Shown one piece after another: positions 9,621-18,677 of a DNA stretch of 64,000 bases. Location: IMG/VR virus record IMGVR_UViG_3300046810_000338, positions 124,001-188,000 of that record. One strand, given 5' to 3'. How positions within the stretch are numbered: position 1 is the first letter of the stretch; each line of letters begins with the position of its first letter. Below the pieces are notes generated by a model, which searched no databases, was not told where the DNA came from, and saw nothing but the letters and a program-made list of their open reading frames with translations. Made by a program: the position numbers and the translations under genes.

Positions 9621-10889
9621 TTAGATGAACAGGTCTCGCTTGATATCCAAGATGGCCCCACGGCCAGGCTGTAGGCGGTGCAAGTTGGTACGCACTGAGT
9701 CTACGGCTGGAGCGTTATGCCATTGGATAGAATGCATGCGCAGCCGGTCGTGAATGCCATCTGGCACAATGACCACCCATTTGTCCCCTTCGTCTTCCAA
9801 CACGTAACTCATCAATCGCCCATCGTGGTGAACGGCTGGAGAGGTTACGGTTTCGTGGTGCAGGAACACACAAGGATGCTGTGTGGTTTCCAAAGGGATC
9901 TTGTCGCAATAGACGTCCGGCGACTGGACGGCAATGACAAACGATTGACTGGTGGTCAACAGTTCCAGCAGGAAGTTACGACCCTTGGACTCTGGTACAG
10001 AGATCATGGTGGGGGCCAGTGGGTTGGTGGAGATAGCCGCTCGGATACGCTGCAAGTCCAGATACTTCTCAGCCTTGAGGAAGTTCTCCAAGTACGGGTA
10101 GCGCAACAGGTTCAGTTCAAAACCTGAGTTACCGATCGAGCGGAACGTGCTGCCCAGTGGAATCAGGTAACCACACAGAGAGAGCATGGCCGTGCAGTTA
10201 TCCCAATCCACATCCTGTACGTTGAGATACAGCGGGGTGTCCAACGTGGCACCGTCTTCGGGCAGCCCTGTGATCATGCTTTCCACGATCGGATAGATCT
10301 TGCACCCCCCAAGAGGAGCCAGACTCACAATGCCCACCGAGTTGATCTTGGCTACCTGAGCAGACCGACCACCTTGCTTAACGTAGAGCCCACGTTCAGA
10401 GGAGTAGGTGCGATGCAGAAAGCCGTTGACTTCCACCAGTACGTTTGCCTCAACCAGTCCAGGGGAAAGCGTTGGGTGAGTCAGCAGTAGGTCTGTACGC
10501 TCAGAGAACGGCACTGTTGGATTAGGTCCAGCACCTGGGATAACTTCCTCTACTGAAAAGTTTGCTTCCAATGCGTTGGCGTACTTGGCTTTCACCGTCT
10601 TGGTTGCGGTGAACTCGACAGTAGGCAGTGCTTTGTTAGCCAGTGCAATGAACCAATTGGCAACGGTGATTGCCGAGAAGAAGGGTTGAACGAATGTCGC
10701 CCCATCCTGAGTGAAGTCGAAAAGGTATTGCACGTTGGGACTGGCATCGTGAGTCAAGATCATGCGGCTTTGACCATAAGTTGCAGTCAGTGTCCGAACG
10801 TCCGCTGCGAGGACTTCGGCCAGGTCAACTTCTAACCAGCGCATTCCATTGGCATTCACTTTGTGATAGAACTTTCTTAGCGTGTACAT
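9621..10889 (-). CDS. Virion structural protein (conserved in phiKZ-like phages)
   Basis: 422-aa ORF. Motifs NVLVEVNGFLHRT and LSLCGYL, and a position divergent from the tail-fibre genes, are recalled from relatives. Confidence 0.55.
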   Translation of the reverse strand: MYTLRKFYHKVNANGMRWLEVDLAEVLAADVRTLTATYGQSRMILTHDASPNVQYLFDFTQDGATFVQPFFSAITVANWFIALANKALPTVEFTATKTVKAKYANALEANFSVEEVIPGAGPNPTVPFSERTDLLLTHPTLSPGLVEANVLVEVNGFLHRTYSSERGLYVKQGGRSAQVAKINSVGIVSLAPLGGCKIYPIVESMITGLPEDGATLDTPLYLNVQDVDWDNCTAMLSLCGYLIPLGSTFRSIGNSGFELNLLRYPYLENFLKAEKYLDLQRIRAAISTNPLAPTMISVPESKGRNFLLELLTTSQSFVIAVQSPDVYCDKIPLETTQHPCVFLHHETVTSPAVHHDGRLMSYVLEDEGDKWVVIVPDGIHDRLRMHSIQWHNAPAVDSVRTNLHRLQPGRGAILDIKRDLFI

Positions 10890-10992: not shown

Positions 10993-13620
10993 ATGGCAAC
11001 TGATCTCAACACTGTAACCCTCCCCTTCGACCGCTGGGGGACTGCCCTCACCAACAAGCGTGAAGGCGAACGGTACGAGCTGACCGCTGTAACGTGGTCG
11101 GAATTCAACATAATCATCCCGCAGTATGCCCCTTTTTACTCGGCCTCCATCGACTACCTCGTGCATTACCCTAGCGGTGACAAACTGTATCGTGGCATTC
11201 ACTGGATCGAAGGCTGGTACTACCAGTCCGCCTCCGGTGAGATCGGCCTGGACTTGCATTGCTGCATTTACTTCTACGATCCAACGCTGAGCGGGGAGAT
11301 TCTTATCCCAAGCTATCAGGCGATGGGTGGGGAGTGGCAACTCAACGGTATTCTGTTGACTCAGATCCTGGCTAACAAGCTGCTGAACCCACTGCGTTAC
11401 TACTGGGAACAGATTGCTAACCTGCCTGAGATCTTCAACCCGCTGGACCATGACCAGGATATCCAAGACTTCACCAAACTGGGTGACCTGATCGACGTTC
11501 TGCAAGACATGGCTCGTGCGATTGACAGCACCACCGGCGATGCCGGCGCTGACTTCCGTGCACACATGATCAACTACAACAACGTTCACCAGGTAAACAA
11601 AGCGCAGGTCGGGTTGCCGTTGGTTCAGAACTACGGCATTGCTACGGCTTCTGACATCGCTCAAGGTGTGATGACCTCAACGGTGTACATGAACCCACCG
11701 ATGACCAACCTGATGATCCAGCAGATTGCCATTGCTGCCCTGGCTCAACACACCGCCGACCAGACCAACAGCCACCATGTGACTGCTGCTCAAACCGGTG
11801 CGTACAGTCAGTTGGAAATCAACGCGATGTTGGAGTCCCTGGCCAACGGGTTGCTGTACAACATCAAAGCCTACCGTCTGGAAGGCAAAAGTGTTAGCGA
11901 CATCGTGACCATGGCCAAGGAGGATTTGAATGCCTCCATCGACGCCATCAGCAAGAACGTTCAGGCCATTGTGGACAACGTTCTCAAAGATGCTCAAGTT
12001 ACCAACGCCACTCGCTTTGATAACAAGACATCGGCTGAATGGAACGTACTGATTGCTCAGTCGGCCACCGACGTAGCAACTGGTTTGATCGCTACGAAGA
12101 TGGCTGCGCTCAGTGCTACCAACTGGACGTCGATTCCTTCCATCGAAGATCTGATCAACTTGCAGATCGCTGCGGCACCAAAAGATGCCAACGGCAACCC
12201 GATCGTGCTGAACCCGCTGAACGTGACGGATAAAACCGTCGTCTTCTTTGGCGAGTACACTGCGTTCAAAGCCAACGTGGTCAACGGTGCGACAGTGCTG
12301 GAGCCTAACCAGTTCCCGCTAACGATCCAGTACAAGGCCGTGGACACCGTAAGCGATCTGTCGATCCATGCCGAGGTCACGTATAACGCTGTCATGAAAA
12401 ATGGCACTGTCATTTACACGACCGTGCTGGCCAATCCAGAAGCGACCATGATCCCAGTGATCCGTCGTCACCCAACTGACCTTACCAAAGTTCAGGTGGG
12501 CATGCGTTGGGACGCATCGAGCATGCCAGAGATTGGCTATCAGGTCATGATGGGTGTGTCGATGTTCGCCAAACTGGCAGCACCTATCGCCTGGCACACT
12601 GACGCGGCTAACGCAGGTGTTATCACCTTGCCTGCCAACTACGTCGAAGTGGTCAAGCGGATTGAGTTGGTAGGGGATGCCTCGGGTGCTGGTAAGGACT
12701 GGACTGCCGACATCACTGCCCTTAAGAAGGCGCAGGATGATCTGAAAGCTTCGATTGGCGTCATTCAGGACGCCCTCACGCTGTTCAGTAAAAACGCTGC
12801 GACAATGGGTAACCGTGTATCCGCATTGGAACGACTGAACACCCGTAACCTGACGATGTTCGCTGCTGCGAGCATCACTGGTACGGCTGGGGTCAATGTG
12901 GCTCAACCAGTTCTGGGTTGGTTTGCAGAGGCGTTGGTTACAGCTGCTACTCCAATCACGATGACCTTCCAGTTGGACAAAGGTTACATCACCTACCGCA
13001 TTGCCTACGACTTCAATTCGGCAGTGCTGCATGCGGCGTCCGACCACGACGACCTGACTACCCGTCTGTTGCCGGTGGTTACTCTGGATAGTCGCACTGT
13101 TGACGGCGTTACCAGTCAGTACCTGCGTCTGGGTGCCATCAACTTCGATGCTGCCAAGCAACTGACCATGGTTAACATCGTGTCGGTGGGCACTGCGGTG
13201 ATGGTCTTGGCTGCCCCGGTCTACAGTAACGTTGTGGACTCCAGTGCAGTAACGGTTCCGCCTGGCTTCACGCTGACCAAGTTCAGCAGTGCAACTCGGG
13301 TAGAGCTGAATGCTGTGTCGATGGCGGTCACTCAGCTGACACCGGCAGTGATGGCGGGCGATTCCTCTATCTCGGCAGCTGACACGAACATCATTGACTT
13401 GAGTGTCTTGGATGAAACCGTGTTCGATGTAGCGCATCCTAAAGTGACGGTCAGTCTTCTGGACGACACCGTAGGTAGTGCGACCCATGGCATGTACATC
13501 AACTCTGAGGCGGTCATTGTTGTGGCAACCGATGGCACCGCGGTGTATCTGGTTAACACCGATCCGGCCAATGCAGTGGACTGTCGTTACCGGGTGGAAG
13601 TTCCACGACTTCCTGTTTAA
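10993..13620 (+). CDS. Tail fibre / baseplate fibre protein (phiKZ gp145-like N-terminus)
   Basis: N-terminal IIIPQYAPFY domain; fibre repeats HMINYNNVHQVNKAQVGLPLVQNY and HTADQTNSHHVTAAQTG; coiled coil; beta-rich C-terminus with GMYINSEAVIVVA. Confidence 0.75.
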   Translation: MATDLNTVTLPFDRWGTALTNKREGERYELTAVTWSEFNIIIPQYAPFYSASIDYLVHYPSGDKLYRGIHWIEGWYYQSASGEIGLDLHCCIYFYDPTLSGEILIPSYQAMGGEWQLNGILLTQILANKLLNPLRYYWEQIANLPEIFNPLDHDQDIQDFTKLGDLIDVLQDMARAIDSTTGDAGADFRAHMINYNNVHQVNKAQVGLPLVQNYGIATASDIAQGVMTSTVYMNPPMTNLMIQQIAIAALAQHTADQTNSHHVTAAQTGAYSQLEINAMLESLANGLLYNIKAYRLEGKSVSDIVTMAKEDLNASIDAISKNVQAIVDNVLKDAQVTNATRFDNKTSAEWNVLIAQSATDVATGLIATKMAALSATNWTSIPSIEDLINLQIAAAPKDANGNPIVLNPLNVTDKTVVFFGEYTAFKANVVNGATVLEPNQFPLTIQYKAVDTVSDLSIHAEVTYNAVMKNGTVIYTTVLANPEATMIPVIRRHPTDLTKVQVGMRWDASSMPEIGYQVMMGVSMFAKLAAPIAWHTDAANAGVITLPANYVEVVKRIELVGDASGAGKDWTADITALKKAQDDLKASIGVIQDALTLFSKNAATMGNRVSALERLNTRNLTMFAAASITGTAGVNVAQPVLGWFAEALVTAATPITMTFQLDKGYITYRIAYDFNSAVLHAASDHDDLTTRLLPVVTLDSRTVDGVTSQYLRLGAINFDAAKQLTMVNIVSVGTAVMVLAAPVYSNVVDSSAVTVPPGFTLTKFSSATRVELNAVSMAVTQLTPAVMAGDSSISAADTNIIDLSVLDETVFDVAHPKVTVSLLDDTVGSATHGMYINSEAVIVVATDGTAVYLVNTDPANAVDCRYRVEVPRLPV

Positions 13621-13668
13621 AGCATCGCCCCTCTCAGGAGGGGCGTTACCACCTAAGGGCTTATTGTC

Positions 13669-14511
13669 ATGTCCATTCGGCCAGTCAAGTACGAAATTGA
13701 TAAAACCGGTCTTAACCCCAATAACTTGGTTCTCAATGAGGATCATGTTCTGCCGGCTTCGGGGAAACGCTTTCTTGTCACGGACAATGGACCGTTTTAC
13801 ACCCATTCTGTTGTTTTGACAGACATGGCGACTGGTCAGGTTCTGGCACCTAGAACACAGTACACCGCTATCCAGCTGGAAGAAGAAGCCACGCTGGAAT
13901 CGGGCAAAGAAGTTTGCTCTATTCTCATCATCGACGATGACACGGTCAGTGCTAACGTGATGGTCACCTACCAGTGCTATGGCGGCTGGATGAGTTATTC
14001 TGTTCGAGCCATTCTGGAGATGATCCAGAACCTTGATCTGGATAACCGGGTGATTGATTGGGGTATGATTGTTGGTGCCCCTGATCGTTATCCTCCAGCA
14101 CCTCACGCTCACCCACTGTCTGACATTTACGGTTGGAGCAAACTGTTCCCTGCCTTGAATGCCATCCGTGATGCCATTCTGCGTGGCGATGAAGCCAAGT
14201 TCGATGCTATCCGTACAAGCTTTGCAGCAGAGATTGCCAGACTTGAAGGGCGCATCAATGCAAACGACGGTATATTGCAGATCCACATTGCTGACCACGG
14301 CAACCCTCACCAGGTTGACAAGGCTCAAGTTGGCCTGCCTTTAGTACCAAACTTTGCCATGGCTACCAAGCTTGAGGCAACTGCCGGTGTCTTGGACACT
14401 CGGTTCATGAGCCCACTGCGTGTAAGTGATTCTGTCAACTACATCAACGATGGCATGTTGGCCGAACTCTCCGCGCTGTGCCAAAGTCTGACGGTGGTCT
14501 TCGAGGCATAA
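13669..14511 (+). CDS. Tail-fibre-associated protein (phiKZ gp146-like N-terminal domain)
   Basis: KYEIDKTGLNPNNLVLNEDH, DNRVIDWGMIVGAP..YPPAPHAH and the fibre repeat HIADHGNPHQVDKAQVGLPLVPNF. Confidence 0.7.
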   Translation: MSIRPVKYEIDKTGLNPNNLVLNEDHVLPASGKRFLVTDNGPFYTHSVVLTDMATGQVLAPRTQYTAIQLEEEATLESGKEVCSILIIDDDTVSANVMVTYQCYGGWMSYSVRAILEMIQNLDLDNRVIDWGMIVGAPDRYPPAPHAHPLSDIYGWSKLFPALNAIRDAILRGDEAKFDAIRTSFAAEIARLEGRINANDGILQIHIADHGNPHQVDKAQVGLPLVPNFAMATKLEATAGVLDTRFMSPLRVSDSVNYINDGMLAELSALCQSLTVVFEA

Positions 14512-14514
14512 TCC

Positions 14515-15783
14515 ATGGAAAACCTGGCTGCTTACAAGTCAAGGTTCTCAGCGATGATTGAATCCCTCAAACGGTACGCTGAAGTCAGCGGTGCCGTTTG
14601 TTTGGATGGGGCTCGTAACTTTGTGGCCCAAGGTGAAACCCATACCTTCAACATCACGAACTACGACCGTTTCAGTACGTATGCGGTGACTACCAATCAG
14701 GGGTCGGTTACCCTGATTAAAGACACCATCACGATCACCACGTCCGCCACCTTAACCCCAGTTAATCCCTTTGTACTGACTGTTCGTAAGAACGGAATTA
14801 CGCGGGTGATTAATATGAAAATTGTCTCCATTGGGGTTTCGCCGATCGAGTTCATTGCTCCAACGCCGTTTCAGTTCATCGACGGCAACTCGACCTTGTT
14901 GTCGGTTAAGCCGTTCGATGTTTACCCAGCTGGCAGTCAAACGCATGTTAGTACGGATTGGCAAGTTTCTGCTGATCCCAACTTTATCAGCGTGGCCTTC
15001 CAGTCCATGGGTGACGCGGTCAACAAGCTTTCGATCAATGCACTTGGATTGCCTTACGGTACCAGGTTGTATGCTCGGGCCAGACACAATGGTAGTTCGA
15101 CCAATGCCGCTATCAATCAGGGCCCATGGGTTAACGTAGAGTTCAGAACAGGTCAGACTCGTTTGACCAATTTCGATACCAGTTGGGTCACCAGTTGGGA
15201 AGAAGGAATTCTGCGTCAAACCAGTCGCAACACTGCGTGGGACACTCAAGCTGAGCGCTTCAATCAAGACACTCAGCAATACGAGACCTACACCCGGCAG
15301 ACCAGTCGGACTACGTTGTTTGACACGGTTGAATCGTATCAACGACAGACTAACCATTACACTGATAACTTTACCGAATGGGATACGACCAAGCAGGTCT
15401 ACACCAGCTACCAGACTTCTCAGGTCACTGGTTACTGGCAGGCAGGCGGTCCGCGGTACAGTTCTTACGTGTCGGCTGTGGCCAGATACCAGTATGGTCC
15501 GCAAGGTGTCTTCGATGCCAACGGTAACCCAACTGGTGAAGTGATCATGGTCAACCAGTTCATGGGTTACGACTATGTGCCGGTAAACGTCTATGTCGGT
15601 CAGAATCCAGACTACTACGTGAGTTACAACACCGCCTATCAGGCAGGTCGTTGGACAGACTACATCACGCATAAAACGTCTGGCTATAAAGGCCAAACCT
15701 ACTACCTGACAGCAATTGATCCACGACAGACTAGTCGGGTCACTCACGCTACAACAGAGCGCTCTACCCGAGTCGATCCATAG
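14515..15783 (+). CDS. Fibre-like protein copy A (Ig/FN3-like N-half, Thr/Ser-rich repeat C-half)
   Basis: FN3-like STDWQVSADPNF...LPYGTRLYARARHNG and repeated TS-x-x-T-x-W/F/Y motifs. Clear paralogue of 16771-18039. Confidence 0.65.
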   Translation: MENLAAYKSRFSAMIESLKRYAEVSGAVCLDGARNFVAQGETHTFNITNYDRFSTYAVTTNQGSVTLIKDTITITTSATLTPVNPFVLTVRKNGITRVINMKIVSIGVSPIEFIAPTPFQFIDGNSTLLSVKPFDVYPAGSQTHVSTDWQVSADPNFISVAFQSMGDAVNKLSINALGLPYGTRLYARARHNGSSTNAAINQGPWVNVEFRTGQTRLTNFDTSWVTSWEEGILRQTSRNTAWDTQAERFNQDTQQYETYTRQTSRTTLFDTVESYQRQTNHYTDNFTEWDTTKQVYTSYQTSQVTGYWQAGGPRYSSYVSAVARYQYGPQGVFDANGNPTGEVIMVNQFMGYDYVPVNVYVGQNPDYYVSYNTAYQAGRWTDYITHKTSGYKGQTYYLTAIDPRQTSRVTHATTERSTRVDP

Positions 15784-15801
15784 GTCGGGGGGTAGAGTAA
15801 T

Positions 15802-15819
15802 GGGGGAGGCGACTCCCCC
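15802..15819 (+). terminator. GC-rich hairpin
   Basis: GGGGGAG-GCGA-CTCCCCC between fibre copy A and the next gene. Confidence 0.45.
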
Positions 15820-15834
15820 GTCTTTACCCACGGG

Positions 15835-16737
15835 GTGTTTACATTGAATCCAGTTGACCGTTTGTACCTAGGTTCCCCTCAGGCATCTGAAGTCTCCCGC
15901 ATTGGTCCCAATCAAAGGACCTGTGACAATGATGCCATTTTGGAGTTGGAGAAACTCATTGATCGGATGTGTCCTCTGGCCGTGACGTGCGATGCCCGTC
16001 CCTGCCACCCGCCATTCTTCGACGAATTCTGCTATACCGACATCCAGAATGGGTTGATGCTGCGCACGTTGTCGAGTGAGTTGAATGCTCGTTCGATGAT
16101 GTACGCTTCTAATCAAGAAGCTCGGGAAGCGTTTCCTATCGAGAAGGTTATCGATAAGTACGCATTGGGCGACAATGGCCGTAAGTATCGACGTGTCATC
16201 TTTTTGCCAGGCAACAACTCTGTGTCGTTCATCGACCAGAATCGCATGGCGCAACTGATGGCTACCGGGGATTGGTTTATTAAACCACATCCCGTCTGCA
16301 TTCCTGAAATGGTGAAAGACCTGGCCCGTGTATACGGCTACAGTCGCATCATTGAACCCAACGTATCTGGACATCGTCTATTGGTCGATGCCCAAGAGAT
16401 CGCCACCACCGCCGCCTCTGAGATGTACCTGATGGCAAGGCTGATGGACAAGCCGGTCCTCAACGTTGGGGCGTTTGTCAACCAACACCTAATGTCGTAC
16501 GATTCGATCGTTCGACTTCTGACCAATCGGGATACAGACAAGGCCATCATCAACCGTTGTTTGATGTCGGACTCCTCTGGCTATATTCGTCCCGAGTGGC
16601 CGCTGGAACTGAACCAGAAAATCATTGCCAACTACATCGACTTCGTCATGCACGAACGCGAGAAGTTCAGGATGGTCACCCAGCAGCGCCTGGTGGCTGA
16701 CACCTTTGAAGTTCGCAGTTGGCAGGGTAAGGTCTAG
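15835..16737 (+). CDS. Glycosyltransferase-like (GT-B / capsule-synthesis KpsS-like) protein
   Basis: VIFLPGNN...WFIKPHP...DAQEIATTAASEMYLMARLMDKPVLNV follows the pattern of the C-terminal nucleotide-sugar-binding Rossmann domain (KxHP; T..S..G.EA...GKPV). The start is uncertain (GTG). Confidence 0.5.
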   Translation: MFTLNPVDRLYLGSPQASEVSRIGPNQRTCDNDAILELEKLIDRMCPLAVTCDARPCHPPFFDEFCYTDIQNGLMLRTLSSELNARSMMYASNQEAREAFPIEKVIDKYALGDNGRKYRRVIFLPGNNSVSFIDQNRMAQLMATGDWFIKPHPVCIPEMVKDLARVYGYSRIIEPNVSGHRLLVDAQEIATTAASEMYLMARLMDKPVLNVGAFVNQHLMSYDSIVRLLTNRDTDKAIINRCLMSDSSGYIRPEWPLELNQKIIANYIDFVMHEREKFRMVTQQRLVADTFEVRSWQGKV

Positions 16738-16770
16738 CGTTACAGATTTACTCACTATTGGGAACAGTCA

Positions 16771-18039
16771 ATGGATAATTTAACGGAGTATCAGAGCGAC
16801 TTTTCCGCCATGGTGGCATCGCTCAAGCGTTATGCCGAAGTGGCAGGTGCTGTGGCGCTGGACGGTTTGAAAGGCATCATTGCTGAAGGTGAAACCCATA
16901 CCTTCAATATCACGAACTATGACATCTTCAGCACCTACACAGTGTCCTCTAACCAAGGTACCGTGTCCATTGCCAAAGATGTCATCACCATTTCGACTTT
17001 GCCAGGCGTGCGGGTAATCAATCCGTATCTGCTTAAGGTAACCAAGAATGGGGTGCCGCGCACAATCGAGATGAAGATTGTGTCCACAGGTGTTTCGCCC
17101 GTGGATATTCTGGCACCGATTGCCATGGAAACCTTCGATACCAATGCCCTGACTATCCGCACGTCGGACTTCGCTGTTTATCCGGTTGGCAGCCAGACGC
17201 ATGTTTCGTCGGACTACCAGATTGCCAGCGACCCCGACTTTACCAACATCGTCTGGTCGTCGATGGCAGACACGGTTAACAAGACTGTCATCTTGGTTAC
17301 CGACCTGCCTTACGCTGAGAAGTTCTACATCCGAGCCAGGCATCGCGGTAGCAGCGCAGACGTGACTGCTAACTTAGGTGATTGGACCAGTGTGGCCTTC
17401 CGTACAGGCAAAACCAAACTGACCAACTTTGCCACCAGTTGGGACACCAGTTGGGATGTGGGTCGCGTCCGTCAGACCAGCCGTCAAACAGCTTGGGCAA
17501 CCGATGTGGTCAAGTGGAATGAAGATGCGCAGGGTTATCAAACCCAGCAGCGTCAGACAAGTCGCCTGACCACCTTCGATACTGTCGAAGCGTATGTTCG
17601 TCAGACCAATCATTACACTGACGACTACACCGAGTGGGACACCACCAAACAAGTCTACACCAGCTACACTGTCTCTCAGATGACGGGTTACTGGCAAGCA
17701 GGTGGTGTACGTTACTCCAGCTACATGAGCTATGGCCAAGAGCAGCATGCTCGCTACACGGGTATCCCTGGTATTCCTGGCGTGCCAGACACCGGCTCTG
17801 ACTGGATGACCATCTGGTACGAGAACAACGGTGGTAGTTTGGTGACAGTGCCTGTGGGTACTAACCCAGATGTCTACGTGAGCTACGCCACGGCGTACCA
17901 AGCGGGTAACTGGACCACGTACACCACCCGTAAGTCGTCTGGCTTCAAAGGCCAAACCTACTACGACACTGCGATTGCGACGAGCCAAACTCATCGCACT
18001 ACCAGTATTCAAACTGAACGCAATACTGACGCCATCTAA
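16771..18039 (+). CDS. Fibre-like protein copy B (paralogue of 14515-15783)
   Basis: 422 aa, colinear with copy A. Shared blocks include GETHTFNITNYD, RQTNHYTD.TEWDTTKQVYTSY, TGYWQAGG.RYSSY and KGQTYY. Confidence 0.65.
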   Translation: MDNLTEYQSDFSAMVASLKRYAEVAGAVALDGLKGIIAEGETHTFNITNYDIFSTYTVSSNQGTVSIAKDVITISTLPGVRVINPYLLKVTKNGVPRTIEMKIVSTGVSPVDILAPIAMETFDTNALTIRTSDFAVYPVGSQTHVSSDYQIASDPDFTNIVWSSMADTVNKTVILVTDLPYAEKFYIRARHRGSSADVTANLGDWTSVAFRTGKTKLTNFATSWDTSWDVGRVRQTSRQTAWATDVVKWNEDAQGYQTQQRQTSRLTTFDTVEAYVRQTNHYTDDYTEWDTTKQVYTSYTVSQMTGYWQAGGVRYSSYMSYGQEQHARYTGIPGIPGVPDTGSDWMTIWYENNGGSLVTVPVGTNPDVYVSYATAYQAGNWTTYTTRKSSGFKGQTYYDTAIATSQTHRTTSIQTERNTDAI

Positions 18040-18053
18040 GGCTAGGAGCAGTC

Positions 18054-18677
18054 ATGTCTGTTGCACTGTCTGATTTCAACAAGAAGTTCATCATCACTCG
18101 CTACACCGGCATCGAAGCCGGTTACGTGAATGATCCATCCGATCTGGGTGGTGAGACCAACCACGGTATCACCAAAGGTTTGGCGACTCAGTACGCCGCT
18201 GACCTGAAAGCCAAGTTCGGTTGGGACGGCACCATGCGTAACCTGTCCACTGACGCAGCGTTCTATCTGTACGACGTTGAGTTCTGGGGCAAGATGCAGT
18301 TGGACAACGTCTTCAGTCTGCATCCTCTGATTGCCGACAAGATGTTCGACATCGGTATAAACGCTGGCAAGACGCGTTCGGTGACTTTCCTGCAAGAGTT
18401 CCTGAACGTCAACAACAACGGTCAGAAGCTGTACGCTGACCTCGTGGTAGACGGTGGGATCGGTACCAAGACCTTCAGTGCCCTGCAAGGCTTTGTTACT
18501 GCTCGTGGCAAGGATGGCCTAAAAACCCTCCTGCACTGCCTGATCGCTCGTCAGACCAGCTACTACACCGACATCTCGATGGCGCGTGAGGCTAATGAGC
18601 GCTTTACCTGGGGATGGTTCGGCAGAGCTTACAACTCAGCTGCCGATTACCAGGCACTCGGTTACCTGTACCACTAA
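18054..18677 (+). CDS. Endolysin, glycoside hydrolase family 108 with C-terminal peptidoglycan-binding domain
   Basis: EAGYVNDPSDLGGETNHGIT (GH108 EGGY..D..D.GG.T..GIT), KMFDIGINAG, LVVDGGIGTKT and NERFTWGWF. Confidence 0.9.
   Translation: MSVALSDFNKKFIITRYTGIEAGYVNDPSDLGGETNHGITKGLATQYAADLKAKFGWDGTMRNLSTDAAFYLYDVEFWGKMQLDNVFSLHPLIADKMFDIGINAGKTRSVTFLQEFLNVNNNGQKLYADLVVDGGIGTKTFSALQGFVTARGKDGLKTLLHCLIARQTSYYTDISMAREANERFTWGWFGRAYNSAADYQALGYLYH

What the first reader, a model, noticed from the sequence alone, without database searches (positions are those of the whole stretch)
15469..17853. Divergent tip segment between conserved flanks in the two fibre paralogues
The segment between RYSSY and VGxNPD is essentially unrelated between the copies: A 15469-15594 (42 aa, VSAVARYQYGPQGVFDANGNPTGEVIMVNQFMGYDYVPVNVY) and B 17725-17853 (43 aa, MSYGQEQHARYTGIPGIPGVPDTGSDWMTIWYENNGGSLVTVP). 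The flanks are highly conserved, including short identical DNA stretches (ggttactggca upstream, aaaggccaaacctactac downstream). This resembles a receptor-specificity loop exchangeable by recombination, giving two alternative specificities per virion or per population.
Basis: partly seen in the sequence, partly recalled or inferred. Interest (0 to 1): 0.6.

Follow-up and report, generated by a model that had tools for sequence, protein, structure and literature searches.

The report
Swappable tip in duplicated phage fibres
Two duplicated tail-fibre genes of an uncultured giant soil phage are alike except for one roughly 42-residue block near the end, and in related phages that same spot is a swap site for different binding modules, so it most likely sets which bacteria the phage can grip.

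Summary
Genes A (14515-15783) and B (16771-18039) each encode 422 aa and are 56-57% identical. Residues 319-360/361 are statistically unrelated, between flanks that are 72-82% identical.

The genome is a phiKZ-like jumbo phage from a rhizosphere metagenome. A and B are distal tail-fibre subunits: N-terminal helix, Ig/FN3-like domains, a threonine period-4 repeat shaft, a non-repeat knob (the variable block), and a conserved repeat arm.

- **Supported at family level.** In six paralogue or orthologue comparisons from related contigs, variation concentrates at this pre-C-terminal site. In one lineage (L009/L031) the flanks are 92-99% identical in DNA between paralogues and between phages, while the tips are unique. 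One orthologue carries a whole Kelch propeller at the site.
- **Not supported for this genome.** Synonymous sites between A and B are saturated. Exact DNA runs are 22 nt or shorter and not specific to the flanks. I found no reverse transcriptase, invertase, inverted repeats or chimeric contigs.

So this is an old duplication giving two fixed specificities, not an active switch.

The gene between A and B has a KpsC/WbbB-like glycosyltransferase fold and accompanies threonine-repeat fibres in every context examined.

The parts
10993..13620 (+). 875-aa fibre/baseplate-attached protein. Its N-terminal adaptor domain (about aa 1-270) is paralogous to the 280-aa protein.
   Evidence: PHROG phrog_2163 (virion structural protein) 1.8e-51 and phrog_13857 (tail protein) 7.6e-40. 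Homologous N-termini occur in L007, L009 and L012 fibres.
13669..14511 (+). 280-aa adaptor-only protein. It corresponds to the N-terminal part of fibres that are fused to an A-like part in relatives. Its stop is 3 nt before, and in frame with, the start of A.
   Evidence: phrog_2163 3.7e-77. tblastn hits in 290 phiKZ-like phage records, 33-42% identity. It aligns to aa 19-287 of P0066, while A aligns to aa 328-584 of the same protein. Sequence read.
14515..15783 (+). Paralogue A, 422 aa: N-terminal helix (aa 1-25), Ig/FN3-like domains (aa ~28-212), Thr period-4 repeat shaft (aa ~216-318), knob, C-terminal repeat arm.
15469..15594 (+). Variable knob of A (aa 319-360, 42 aa). It interrupts the Thr repeats: T 2%, G+P 19%, aromatics 17%.
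15595..15780 (+). Conserved C-terminal Thr-repeat arm of A (aa 361-422).
   Evidence: 72% identity to B and pN 0.25. Invariant Thr at 4-residue spacing across the family.
15802..15819 (+). G+C-rich hairpin (7-bp stem, 4-nt loop) followed by GTCTTT, between A and X. Possible terminator or RNA-stability element.
   Evidence: Read directly. The simple scan did not list this stem, and it found no more terminator-like sites overall than shuffles give.
15835..16737 (+). Gene X (300 aa; the likely true start is TTG at 15844). It has a KpsC/WbbB-like GT-B glycosyltransferase fold and is a constant neighbour of Thr-repeat fibres.
   Evidence: AF2 pLDDT 89.1. Foldseek hits to WbbB, E 1e-5, prob 1.0. VIA Z 10.4 to KpsC, 216 residues aligned. 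Adjacency shown.
16771..18039 (+). Paralogue B, 422 aa, with the same architecture as A.
17725..17853 (+). Variable knob of B (aa 319-361, 43 aa): T 9%, G+P 25%, aromatics 12%. It keeps an aromatic-x-E-N-(N)-G-G turn seen in the knobs of P0036 and P0097.
18054..18677 (+). GH108 + PG_binding_3 endolysin. This is context: the same fibre-X-fibre-endolysin layout occurs in L014-L016.
   Evidence: Pfam PF05838 1.7e-16 and PF09374 1.1e-14. Layouts.

Best explanation
A and B are two anciently duplicated distal tail-fibre (receptor-binding) subunits of a phiKZ-like jumbo phage. Each is a threonine-repeat shaft interrupted, about 60 residues before the C-terminus, by a short non-repeat knob rich in Gly, Pro and aromatic residues. 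That knob is the family's cassette site: the place where binding modules are inserted and replaced, while the repeat arms on both sides are kept.

The two knobs most likely contact different host-surface receptors. Both genes are intact, co-oriented and under purifying selection, with no switch between them. The phage therefore probably displays both fibres, or a mixture on a shared adaptor (the 280-aa protein), and so has two fixed specificities.

Knob replacement happens on evolutionary time by homologous recombination or gene conversion across the conserved arms. This is seen directly in a related lineage. In this genome the last such event is too old to leave a DNA trace.

Shown: the divergence pattern, its recurrence at the same site, the DNA-level flank identity in L009/L031, and the Kelch domain at the site.
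Inferred: receptor contact, distal geometry, co-display of both fibres, and trimeric state.
For: - **Divergence in the window.** The knob is 20% identical against 72-82% in the flanks, P = 1.5e-4. pN is 0.62 in the knob against 0.22-0.32 elsewhere, with pS saturated.
- **Fibre identity.** The genes sit in synteny with adaptor and baseplate genes, and relatives carry adaptor-fused versions. Ig/FN3-like domains are shared with hundreds of multi-repeat proteins.
- **Same site variable in other sets.** This holds for the L007 pair, the L009 trio and the L014/15/16 orthologues.
- **Close-orthologue test.** P0062/L031 p2 and L009 p2 are 80-97% identical everywhere except this one block, which is 20% aa identical with an indel. 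P0097 vs L009 p1 also has its minimum here.
- **Flank DNA in L009/L031.** Flanks are 92-100% identical between L009 p1 and p2, including a 98-nt exact run, while the rest of the genes is 40-60%. They are 97-99% identical to L031 p2. The tips have no DNA match anywhere.
- **Kelch domain at the site.** L031 p3 carries about 320 aa, with a Kelch propeller, exactly where L009 p3 has a 44-aa knob.
- **No programmed mechanism.** Searches found none.
Against: - No structure was obtained. AF2 on a 2-sequence alignment gave pLDDT 34.6, the complex predictor was unavailable, and there is no PDB or Atlas relative. 'Tip' and 'trimer' therefore rest on analogy.
- The host, the receptor and virion proteomics are all unknown.
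- In the window itself no recombination tract is detectable.
- No close orthologues of A or B exist in any collection searched. The family-level evidence comes from proteins only about 30% identical to A and B.
- The L014-16 orthologues have a second variable block in mid-shaft, so the pre-C-terminal site is not the only variable one.
Confidence: 0.62

Rival explanations
1. The block is an unconstrained surface loop or linker that has drifted neutrally since the duplication. It has no role in specificity.
For: pN (0.62) is about equal to pS (0.66) in the block. The segments are not alignable. No function has been tested.
Against: - Length (42 vs 43 aa) and the Gly/Pro/aromatic-rich, Thr-poor composition are kept.
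- In L009/L031, gene-conversion tracts stop at the block's borders on both sides, although the flanks are homogenised. A neutral loop would be converted along with them.
- Another non-repeat insert in L009 p2 is 87-93% conserved between orthologues, while only this site is replaced.
- A folded Kelch domain occupies the site in L031 p3.
Confidence: 0.12
2. The block is a chain-sorting or folding-nucleation determinant. It makes each paralogue assemble only with itself, preventing mixed trimers between co-expressed fibres that have near-identical arms.
For: The paralogues are co-encoded, and their arms are 72-100% identical (window; L009). Many fibres fold from the C-terminal end (general knowledge, not tested here).
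Against: The same site also differs between orthologues in different phages, where no sorting is needed. A Kelch propeller at the site suggests ligand binding rather than registry. This role is compatible with a receptor role, not exclusive of it.
Confidence: 0.12
3. The block is actively diversified or switched in this phage: a diversity-generating retroelement, site-specific inversion, or ongoing A/B recombination that produces chimeras in the population.
For: There are conserved flanks with short identical DNA stretches, and the clustering of identical codons is borderline (P = 0.018-0.05).
Against: - The 228-kb record holds no reverse transcriptase and no template copy of either block.
- There is no resolvase/invertase and only one 16-nt imperfect inverted repeat.
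- The genes are co-oriented.
- The only public run holding the locus shows one contig with no joints or variants. Contigs hide rare forms, so this point is weak.
- Synonymous sites are saturated.
Confidence: 0.04

Closest known systems
gp38 adhesins of T2/T6-type phages: hypervariable segments between conserved glycine-rich motifs (Trojet et al. 2011, PMC3157838)
   Same: Specificity-determining variable segments are embedded in a conserved structural scaffold near the fibre end. The conserved scaffold-coding DNA allows segments to be interchanged. The Thr-repeat/knob protein also occurs as a small stand-alone protein next to fibre genes in some phages (L010, L011, L027, L028).
   Different: No sequence relationship: Pfam and PHROG give nothing. 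The scaffold here is a Thr period-4 repeat, not polyglycine motifs. There is one main variable site rather than four. In the window the module is the C-terminal half of the fibre protein itself.
T4 gp37 receptor-binding tip, where the chain runs out to a small head domain and back along the needle (Bartual et al. 2010; recalled from memory, not read here)
   Same: A short variable segment lies between two conserved arms close to the C-terminus. In L009/L031 both arms are conserved together, as expected if they pack against each other.
   Different: There are no His-x-His iron-binding repeats and no homology. The out-and-back topology is a hypothesis here, with no structure to test it.
Phages with several receptor-binding proteins on one virion, such as the jumbo phage phiKp24 with branched fibres (cited in PMC13282480)
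   Same: Several fibre genes with a shared attachment part and different distal parts lie in tandem. Relatives carry 2-3 A-like paralogues plus adaptor proteins.
   Different: The distal parts here are not depolymerase tailspikes. Branching or co-display has not been shown.
Repeat adhesins with a dedicated glycosyltransferase, such as AIDA-I/Aah and streptococcal serine-rich repeat proteins (from memory); for gene X, the beta-Kdo transferases KpsC (GT107) and WbbB (GT99)
   Same: A hydroxy-amino-acid-rich repeat protein is always encoded next to a GT-B-fold enzyme. X matches KpsC/WbbB over nearly its full length.
   Different: No Pfam PF05159 hit at sequence level. Donor, acceptor and activity are unknown. 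X could be a non-catalytic assembly factor.

Membership tests
Thr-repeat/knob fibre module with X partner (defined here; I found no published description) | Thr at 4-residue spacing over tens to hundreds of residues | tested here: met
   Invariant Thr at A positions 240/244, 263/267, 283/287/291, 381/385, 395/399 and 410/414/418 across 5-7 proteins. The periodicity is weaker in A and B than in relatives.
Thr-repeat/knob fibre module with X partner (defined here; I found no published description) | Non-repeat Gly/aromatic-rich block inside the repeats, followed by a conserved repeat arm to the C-terminus | tested here: met
   Seen in A and B, and in P0036, P0097, P0062, P0066, P0070, L009, L014-16, L026 and L028.
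Thr-repeat/knob fibre module with X partner (defined here; I found no published description) | An X homologue encoded directly beside the repeat protein | tested here: met
   All 16 contexts examined: the window, L007, L009-L016, L026-L028, L031, and Caulobacter phages Lullwater and Cr30. In L012 the repeat fibre follows X. In the window A precedes X and B follows it.
phiKZ-like jumbo phage tail fibre with YomR-like N-terminal adaptor | phiKZ-type major capsid protein in the genome | tested here: met
   PF25620 hit, 1.1e-158, at G000:C1:115979-117856.
phiKZ-like jumbo phage tail fibre with YomR-like N-terminal adaptor | Adaptor domain (phrog_2163/13857) within the same polypeptide | tested here: not met
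   A and B lack it. It is carried by the neighbouring 280-aa and 875-aa proteins. It is fused to the A-like part in L007 and L012.
T2/T6 gp38 adhesin | Sequence homology and glycine-rich motifs | tested here: not met
   No Pfam or PHROG match. No tblastn hit in 50,697 phage records.
Diversity-generating retroelement target protein | Reverse transcriptase plus a template repeat of the variable region | tested here: not met
   PF00078 is absent. Neither block has a second copy in the 228-kb record. The record is about 82% complete.
Invertible fibre-tip switch (Mu Gin / P1 Cin type) | Serine invertase, inverted crossover sites, and alternative tips in opposite orientation | tested here: not met
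   PF00239 is absent. There is one 16-nt, 88% inverted repeat only. A and B are on the same strand.
Gene X: beta-Kdo transferase-like GT-B (KpsC GT107 / WbbB GT99) | Fold similarity over most of the protein | tested here: met
   Foldseek E 1.1e-5, prob 1.0, TMq 0.43. VIA Z 10.4, rmsd 4.0, 216 residues aligned to KpsC 6mgc. Atlas clusters carrying PF05159 score 0.95.
Gene X: beta-Kdo transferase-like GT-B (KpsC GT107 / WbbB GT99) | Family sequence signature and catalytic residues (His-Pro motif, catalytic Asp) | tested here: inconclusive
   K147-x-H149-P150, D104 and E193 are invariant in 22 homologues. There is no Pfam hit even at E 10. I did not verify residue-level superposition on the KpsC/WbbB active site.

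The most novel reading that the evidence does not exclude
The Thr-repeat/knob protein and gene X form a previously undescribed mobile two-gene host-recognition module. It is found in podo-, sipho-, T4-like and phiKZ-like phages. In this reading, a KpsC/WbbB-like glycosyltransferase O-glycosylates the threonine repeats of the fibre shaft using a host nucleotide-sugar. The unglycosylated knob, set at a recombination-prone cassette site, provides specificity and can be anything from about 30 residues to a whole Kelch propeller.
Probability: 0.3. Interest if true: 0.75.

Novelty: new variant of a known kind. Interest (0 to 1): 0.5.

Why it matters
Tail fibres of phiKZ-like jumbo phages are poorly characterised; a 2026 review says little beyond their length. 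This locus and its relatives define a fibre type with no Pfam, PDB or literature match in what I searched. It has one sharply delimited site where binding modules are exchanged, flanked by arms that in some lineages are kept near-identical in DNA.

That gives a concrete, testable rule for locating host-range determinants in uncultured jumbo phages, and a natural scaffold for studying how receptor-binding modules are swapped. The constant pairing with a glycosyltransferase-fold gene raises the testable possibility that phage fibres are glycosylated by their own enzyme.

Tried and rejected
- **Close relatives of A and B: none found.** Megablast and tblastn against 50,697 phage records gave nothing for the whole genes or for the C-terminal 123 aa. 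IMG/VR pattern scans with A and with X found nothing. The word-index search found only self, the paralogue and an FN3-repeat protein. With a 5-sequence profile it was swamped by repeat words.
- **Structure: not obtained.**
  - AF2 of A with a 2-sequence alignment gave pLDDT 34.6 and was not used.
  - PDB sequence searches found nothing.
  - The Atlas search on the C-terminal half gave only TM below 0.4, to outer-membrane barrels, which I judged meaningless.
- **Population test for A/B chimeras: uninformative.** Only one public run holds the locus. It is kept as contigs and is probably the source sample, so it cannot show rare variants.
- **Programmed diversification: rejected.** I tested for a diversity-generating retroelement, an inversion switch, and recent gene conversion in the window.
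- **Repeat-gap heuristic: dropped.** A crude scan for breaks in Thr periodicity was too noisy for A and B, and the script ended in an error on the last protein. I used it only qualitatively.
- **Phage-encoded CMP-sugar synthesis genes as support for X: absent** (PF02348, PF03102).
- **KVP40-type distant X-like genes:** these are not in a fibre context and were set aside.
- **Hint-like C-terminal domain in the L012 fibre:** Pfam gave no hit.
- **Literature:** searches for threonine-rich or glycosylated tail fibres found nothing relevant.
Full report
**1. Observation**

The window holds two co-oriented 422-codon genes, A (14515-15783) and B (16771-18039). Their products are 57% identical (E 3e-166). 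They are the only two copies in the 228,499-bp virus record from which the window comes.

In 40-column windows identity is 62-75% at the N-terminus and 42-57% through the middle. It rises to 82% at columns 261-320, drops to 20% at 321-360, and returns to 72%.
- So low a minimum arises in 0.015% of column shuffles.
- The two blocks align no better than shuffled sequences (z = -1.1).
- Their composition breaks with the flanks: Thr is 2-9% against 18-23%, and Gly+Pro is 19-25% against 5-11%.

**2. Age of the duplication and DNA-level tests in the window**

A and B are 58% identical in DNA. The Nei-Gojobori proportion of synonymous differences is 0.66-0.79 in every part of the gene, which is saturated. 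The non-synonymous proportion is 0.22-0.32 outside the block and 0.62 inside it.

The duplication is therefore old. Both copies have been kept by purifying selection, and the flanks are conserved as protein, not as DNA.

However, the longest exact run (22 nt) lies in the N-terminal domain, and 11-nt runs occur three times. A permutation that keeps the amino-acid alignment gives P = 0.05 for the 22-nt run and 0.018 for the 18-nt run. This is at most a faint hint.

No other route to active diversification was found.
- No direct repeat longer than 25 nt outside the general homology.
- No meaningful inverted repeat.
- No reverse transcriptase or second copy of either block.
- No invertase.
- The single public run that holds the locus, a rhizosphere metagenome and probably the source, shows one contig without joints or variants. 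That cannot exclude rare forms.

**3. What the genes are**

The genome carries a phiKZ-type major capsid gene. The upstream 280-aa protein has 33-42% identical homologues in 290 records of phiKZ-like phages, including Ralstonia RP12/RP31, Pseudomonas pPa_SNUABM_DT01, Goslar, PhiEaH1 and Xoo-sp14.

The 875-aa and 280-aa proteins upstream of A share an N-terminal domain assigned to virion/tail PHROGs. A and B themselves have no Pfam hit and almost no PHROG hit.

A profile search of 1.84 billion representatives gave 1192 hits. Nearly all matched only aa 25-215, often as many repeated copies in long proteins, which indicates Ig/FN3-like modules. P0004 carries PF16655 and PF25788.

A handful of proteins match further: P0036, P0097, P0062, P0066, P0070 and P0154. 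In P0066 and P0070 the A-like part is fused behind the adaptor domain. The 280-aa protein aligns to P0066 aa 19-287 and A to aa 328-584. The window therefore encodes adaptor and distal part separately. The adaptor's stop is followed after 3 nt, in frame, by A's start, which has its own GAGG ribosome-binding site.

A and B share a well-conserved N-terminal helix (62-75% identity). That fits docking on a common adaptor, but this is inference.

**4. Architecture of the C-terminal half**

From about aa 216 the proteins consist of Thr at 4-residue spacing. The invariant Thr columns are listed. The repeats are interrupted by the variable block and resume for the last ~60 residues.

Every relative has the same plan: repeats, then a non-repeat block rich in Gly and aromatics, then a conserved repeat arm.

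No solved structure or Pfam family matches this region. The low-confidence AF2 and Atlas models suggest only long beta-hairpins.

**5.

Six independent comparisons say yes.
- **(a) Window, A vs B**.
- **(b) L007 tandem pair, 967 and 822 aa.** The block differs in sequence and length between conserved arms. There is also a large shaft indel.
- **(c) L009 tandem trio.** The blocks are unrelated, and the arms are almost identical between paralogues 1 and 2.
- **(d) L014/L015/L016 orthologues, 633/695/607 aa.** Identity is 60-90% except in two indel-rich blocks, one in mid-shaft and one before the C-terminus.
- **(e) L031 p2 (= P0062) vs L009 p2.** Identity is 80-97% along the whole protein, including another non-repeat insert. 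The exception is one block at this site, with 20% aa identity and an 8-aa indel.
- **(f) P0097 vs L009 p1.** The minimum, 33-40%, is at this site.

**6. Recombination signature in a related lineage**

Between L009 paralogues 1 and 2, DNA identity is 40-60% over most of the genes. It is 92% over 128 nt just upstream of the block. Just downstream, 122 of 123 nt are identical, including a 98-nt exact run.

The same flanks are 99.1% (112 nt) and 97.3% (113 nt) identical to L031 p2. They are 90% identical to L031 p1 and 84-87% to L031 p3.

Between the orthologues L009 p2 and L031 p2, the flanks are 90-98% identical in DNA with nearly all codons the same. The rest of the gene is 62-80%. The blocks themselves have no DNA match anywhere in the loci held.

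Flank identity that exceeds what the protein requires, is shared across paralogues and phages, and ends at the block's borders is the expected trace of homologous exchange or gene conversion that spares or replaces the block.

L031 p3 is more than 85% identical to L009 p3 over its first ~390 aa. Yet it has about 320 aa, with a Kelch propeller (Pfam 5.8e-14), exactly where L009 p3 has a 44-aa knob. The shared C-terminal arm then follows. The site therefore accepts whole binding domains.

**7. The gene between A and B**

X (15835/15844-16737) has 32-45% identical homologues directly beside a Thr-repeat protein in every context I opened.
- L007, L009, L010, L011, L012, L013, L014-16, L026, L027, L028 and L031. 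In L027 the repeat ORF had been missed by the gene caller.
- The cultured Caulobacter phages Lullwater (gp41/gp42) and Cr30 (gp254/gp255).
- Sources.

These contexts span podo-, sipho-, T4-like and phiKZ-like genomes.

With a 22-sequence alignment X folds at pLDDT 89.1. Its best structural matches are the beta-Kdo transferases WbbB and KpsC: Foldseek E 1e-5, and VIA Z 10.4 with 216 residues aligned. Atlas clusters with PF05159 are among its nearest neighbours.

Sequence-level Pfam membership fails, and I did not verify the active site. The own genome lacks CMP-sugar synthesis genes.

X is thus a glycosyltransferase-fold partner of the repeat fibre. Whether it glycosylates the repeats or only helps assembly is open.

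**8. Mechanism and rivals**

The best-supported reading is this. A and B are distal fibre subunits whose knob, at the family's cassette site, sets receptor specificity. The phage carries two fixed specificities from an old duplication. Knob turnover occurs by homologous exchange across the arms on evolutionary time.
- **Neutral drift** is disfavoured by the conversion tracts that stop at the borders, by the conserved second insert in L009 p2, and by the Kelch domain.
- **A chain-sorting role** is possible alongside receptor binding, but it does not explain differences between orthologues.
- **Programmed diversification** in this genome is not supported.

**9. Comparison with known systems**

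The logic is that of T2/T6 gp38, where hypervariable segments lie between conserved motifs (PMC3157838). It also resembles fibre-tip mosaicism in general. There is no sequence or demonstrated fold relationship, and the scaffold (Thr period-4 repeats with a glycosyltransferase-fold partner) appears undescribed in the literature I could search.

I therefore class the finding as a new variant of a known kind.

**10. Limits**

- There is no structure, host or proteomics.
- The relatives used for family-level tests are only about 30% identical to A and B.
- The recombination signature comes from one lineage.
- The record is about 82% complete.

Noticed in passing
window 15835-16737 (+); homologues in L007, L009-L016, L026-L028, L031, Caulobacter phages Lullwater gp42 and Cr30 gp255: The gene between the two fibre paralogues has a confident KpsC/WbbB-like glycosyltransferase fold. 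It is always encoded next to a threonine-repeat protein, across very different phage types. This suggests a two-gene module, possibly fibre glycosylation.
   Followed up: partly
window 14509-14517: The 280-aa adaptor gene ends with TAA. After 3 nt, and in the same frame, fibre gene A starts. In relatives (L007, L012) the two parts are one polypeptide. The arrangement is either a split gene or a candidate for occasional read-through; being in frame has a 1-in-3 chance by itself.
   Followed up: partly
window 15802-15819: A 7-bp G+C-rich hairpin with a 4-nt loop, followed by GTCTTT, lies right after A's stop. It may separate A from X-B-endolysin transcriptionally.
   Followed up: no
L031 11835-14150 vs L009 10001-11515: These are orthologous third fibres. 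One has a 44-aa knob. The other has about 320 aa with a Kelch beta-propeller at the same site, and then the same C-terminal arm, which is 84-87% identical in DNA to the downstream flank of another paralogue (L009 p1).
   Followed up: yes
L012 10923-14006: A 1027-aa fibre lies directly after an X homologue. It has an adaptor, four copies of the NPH..VTK.QVGLG motif, Ig/FN3 domains and Thr repeats. These are followed by a run of seven Gly, a Cys, and a ~190-aa non-repeat C-terminal domain that looks Hint-like by eye. Pfam gave no hit.
   Followed up: partly
L027 3210-3650: A 146-aa Thr/Ser-repeat ORF directly upstream of X was missed by the source's gene caller, which called two antisense ORFs instead. 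Repeat fibres of this kind may be systematically under-annotated.
   Followed up: partly
window 9621-10889 (-): A 422-aa gene on the opposite strand, unrelated to A and B despite the equal length, is conserved and syntenic upstream of the fibre cluster in L007, L009, L012 and L031 (23-28% identity). Function unknown.
   Followed up: partly
window 12319-14328 (-), 14752-15831 (-), 17374-18012 (-): Long antisense open frames (669, 359 and 212 aa) overlap the fibre genes. They have no support and are probably by-products of composition.
   Followed up: no
L003 (Pseudomonas phage pPa_SNUABM_DT01) and L004 (Ralstonia phage RP12), downstream of the adaptor-type fibre genes: Clusters of three to seven radical SAM genes follow the fibre genes in these phiKZ-like phages. 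In the window the A-X-B module occupies the corresponding position.
   Followed up: no
L014, L015, L016: These are three related contigs with the same layout as the window: fibres, X, a DUF1353 gene, an adaptor-type fibre of 533-781 aa whose distal end differs completely between the three, then a GH108 endolysin.
   Followed up: partly
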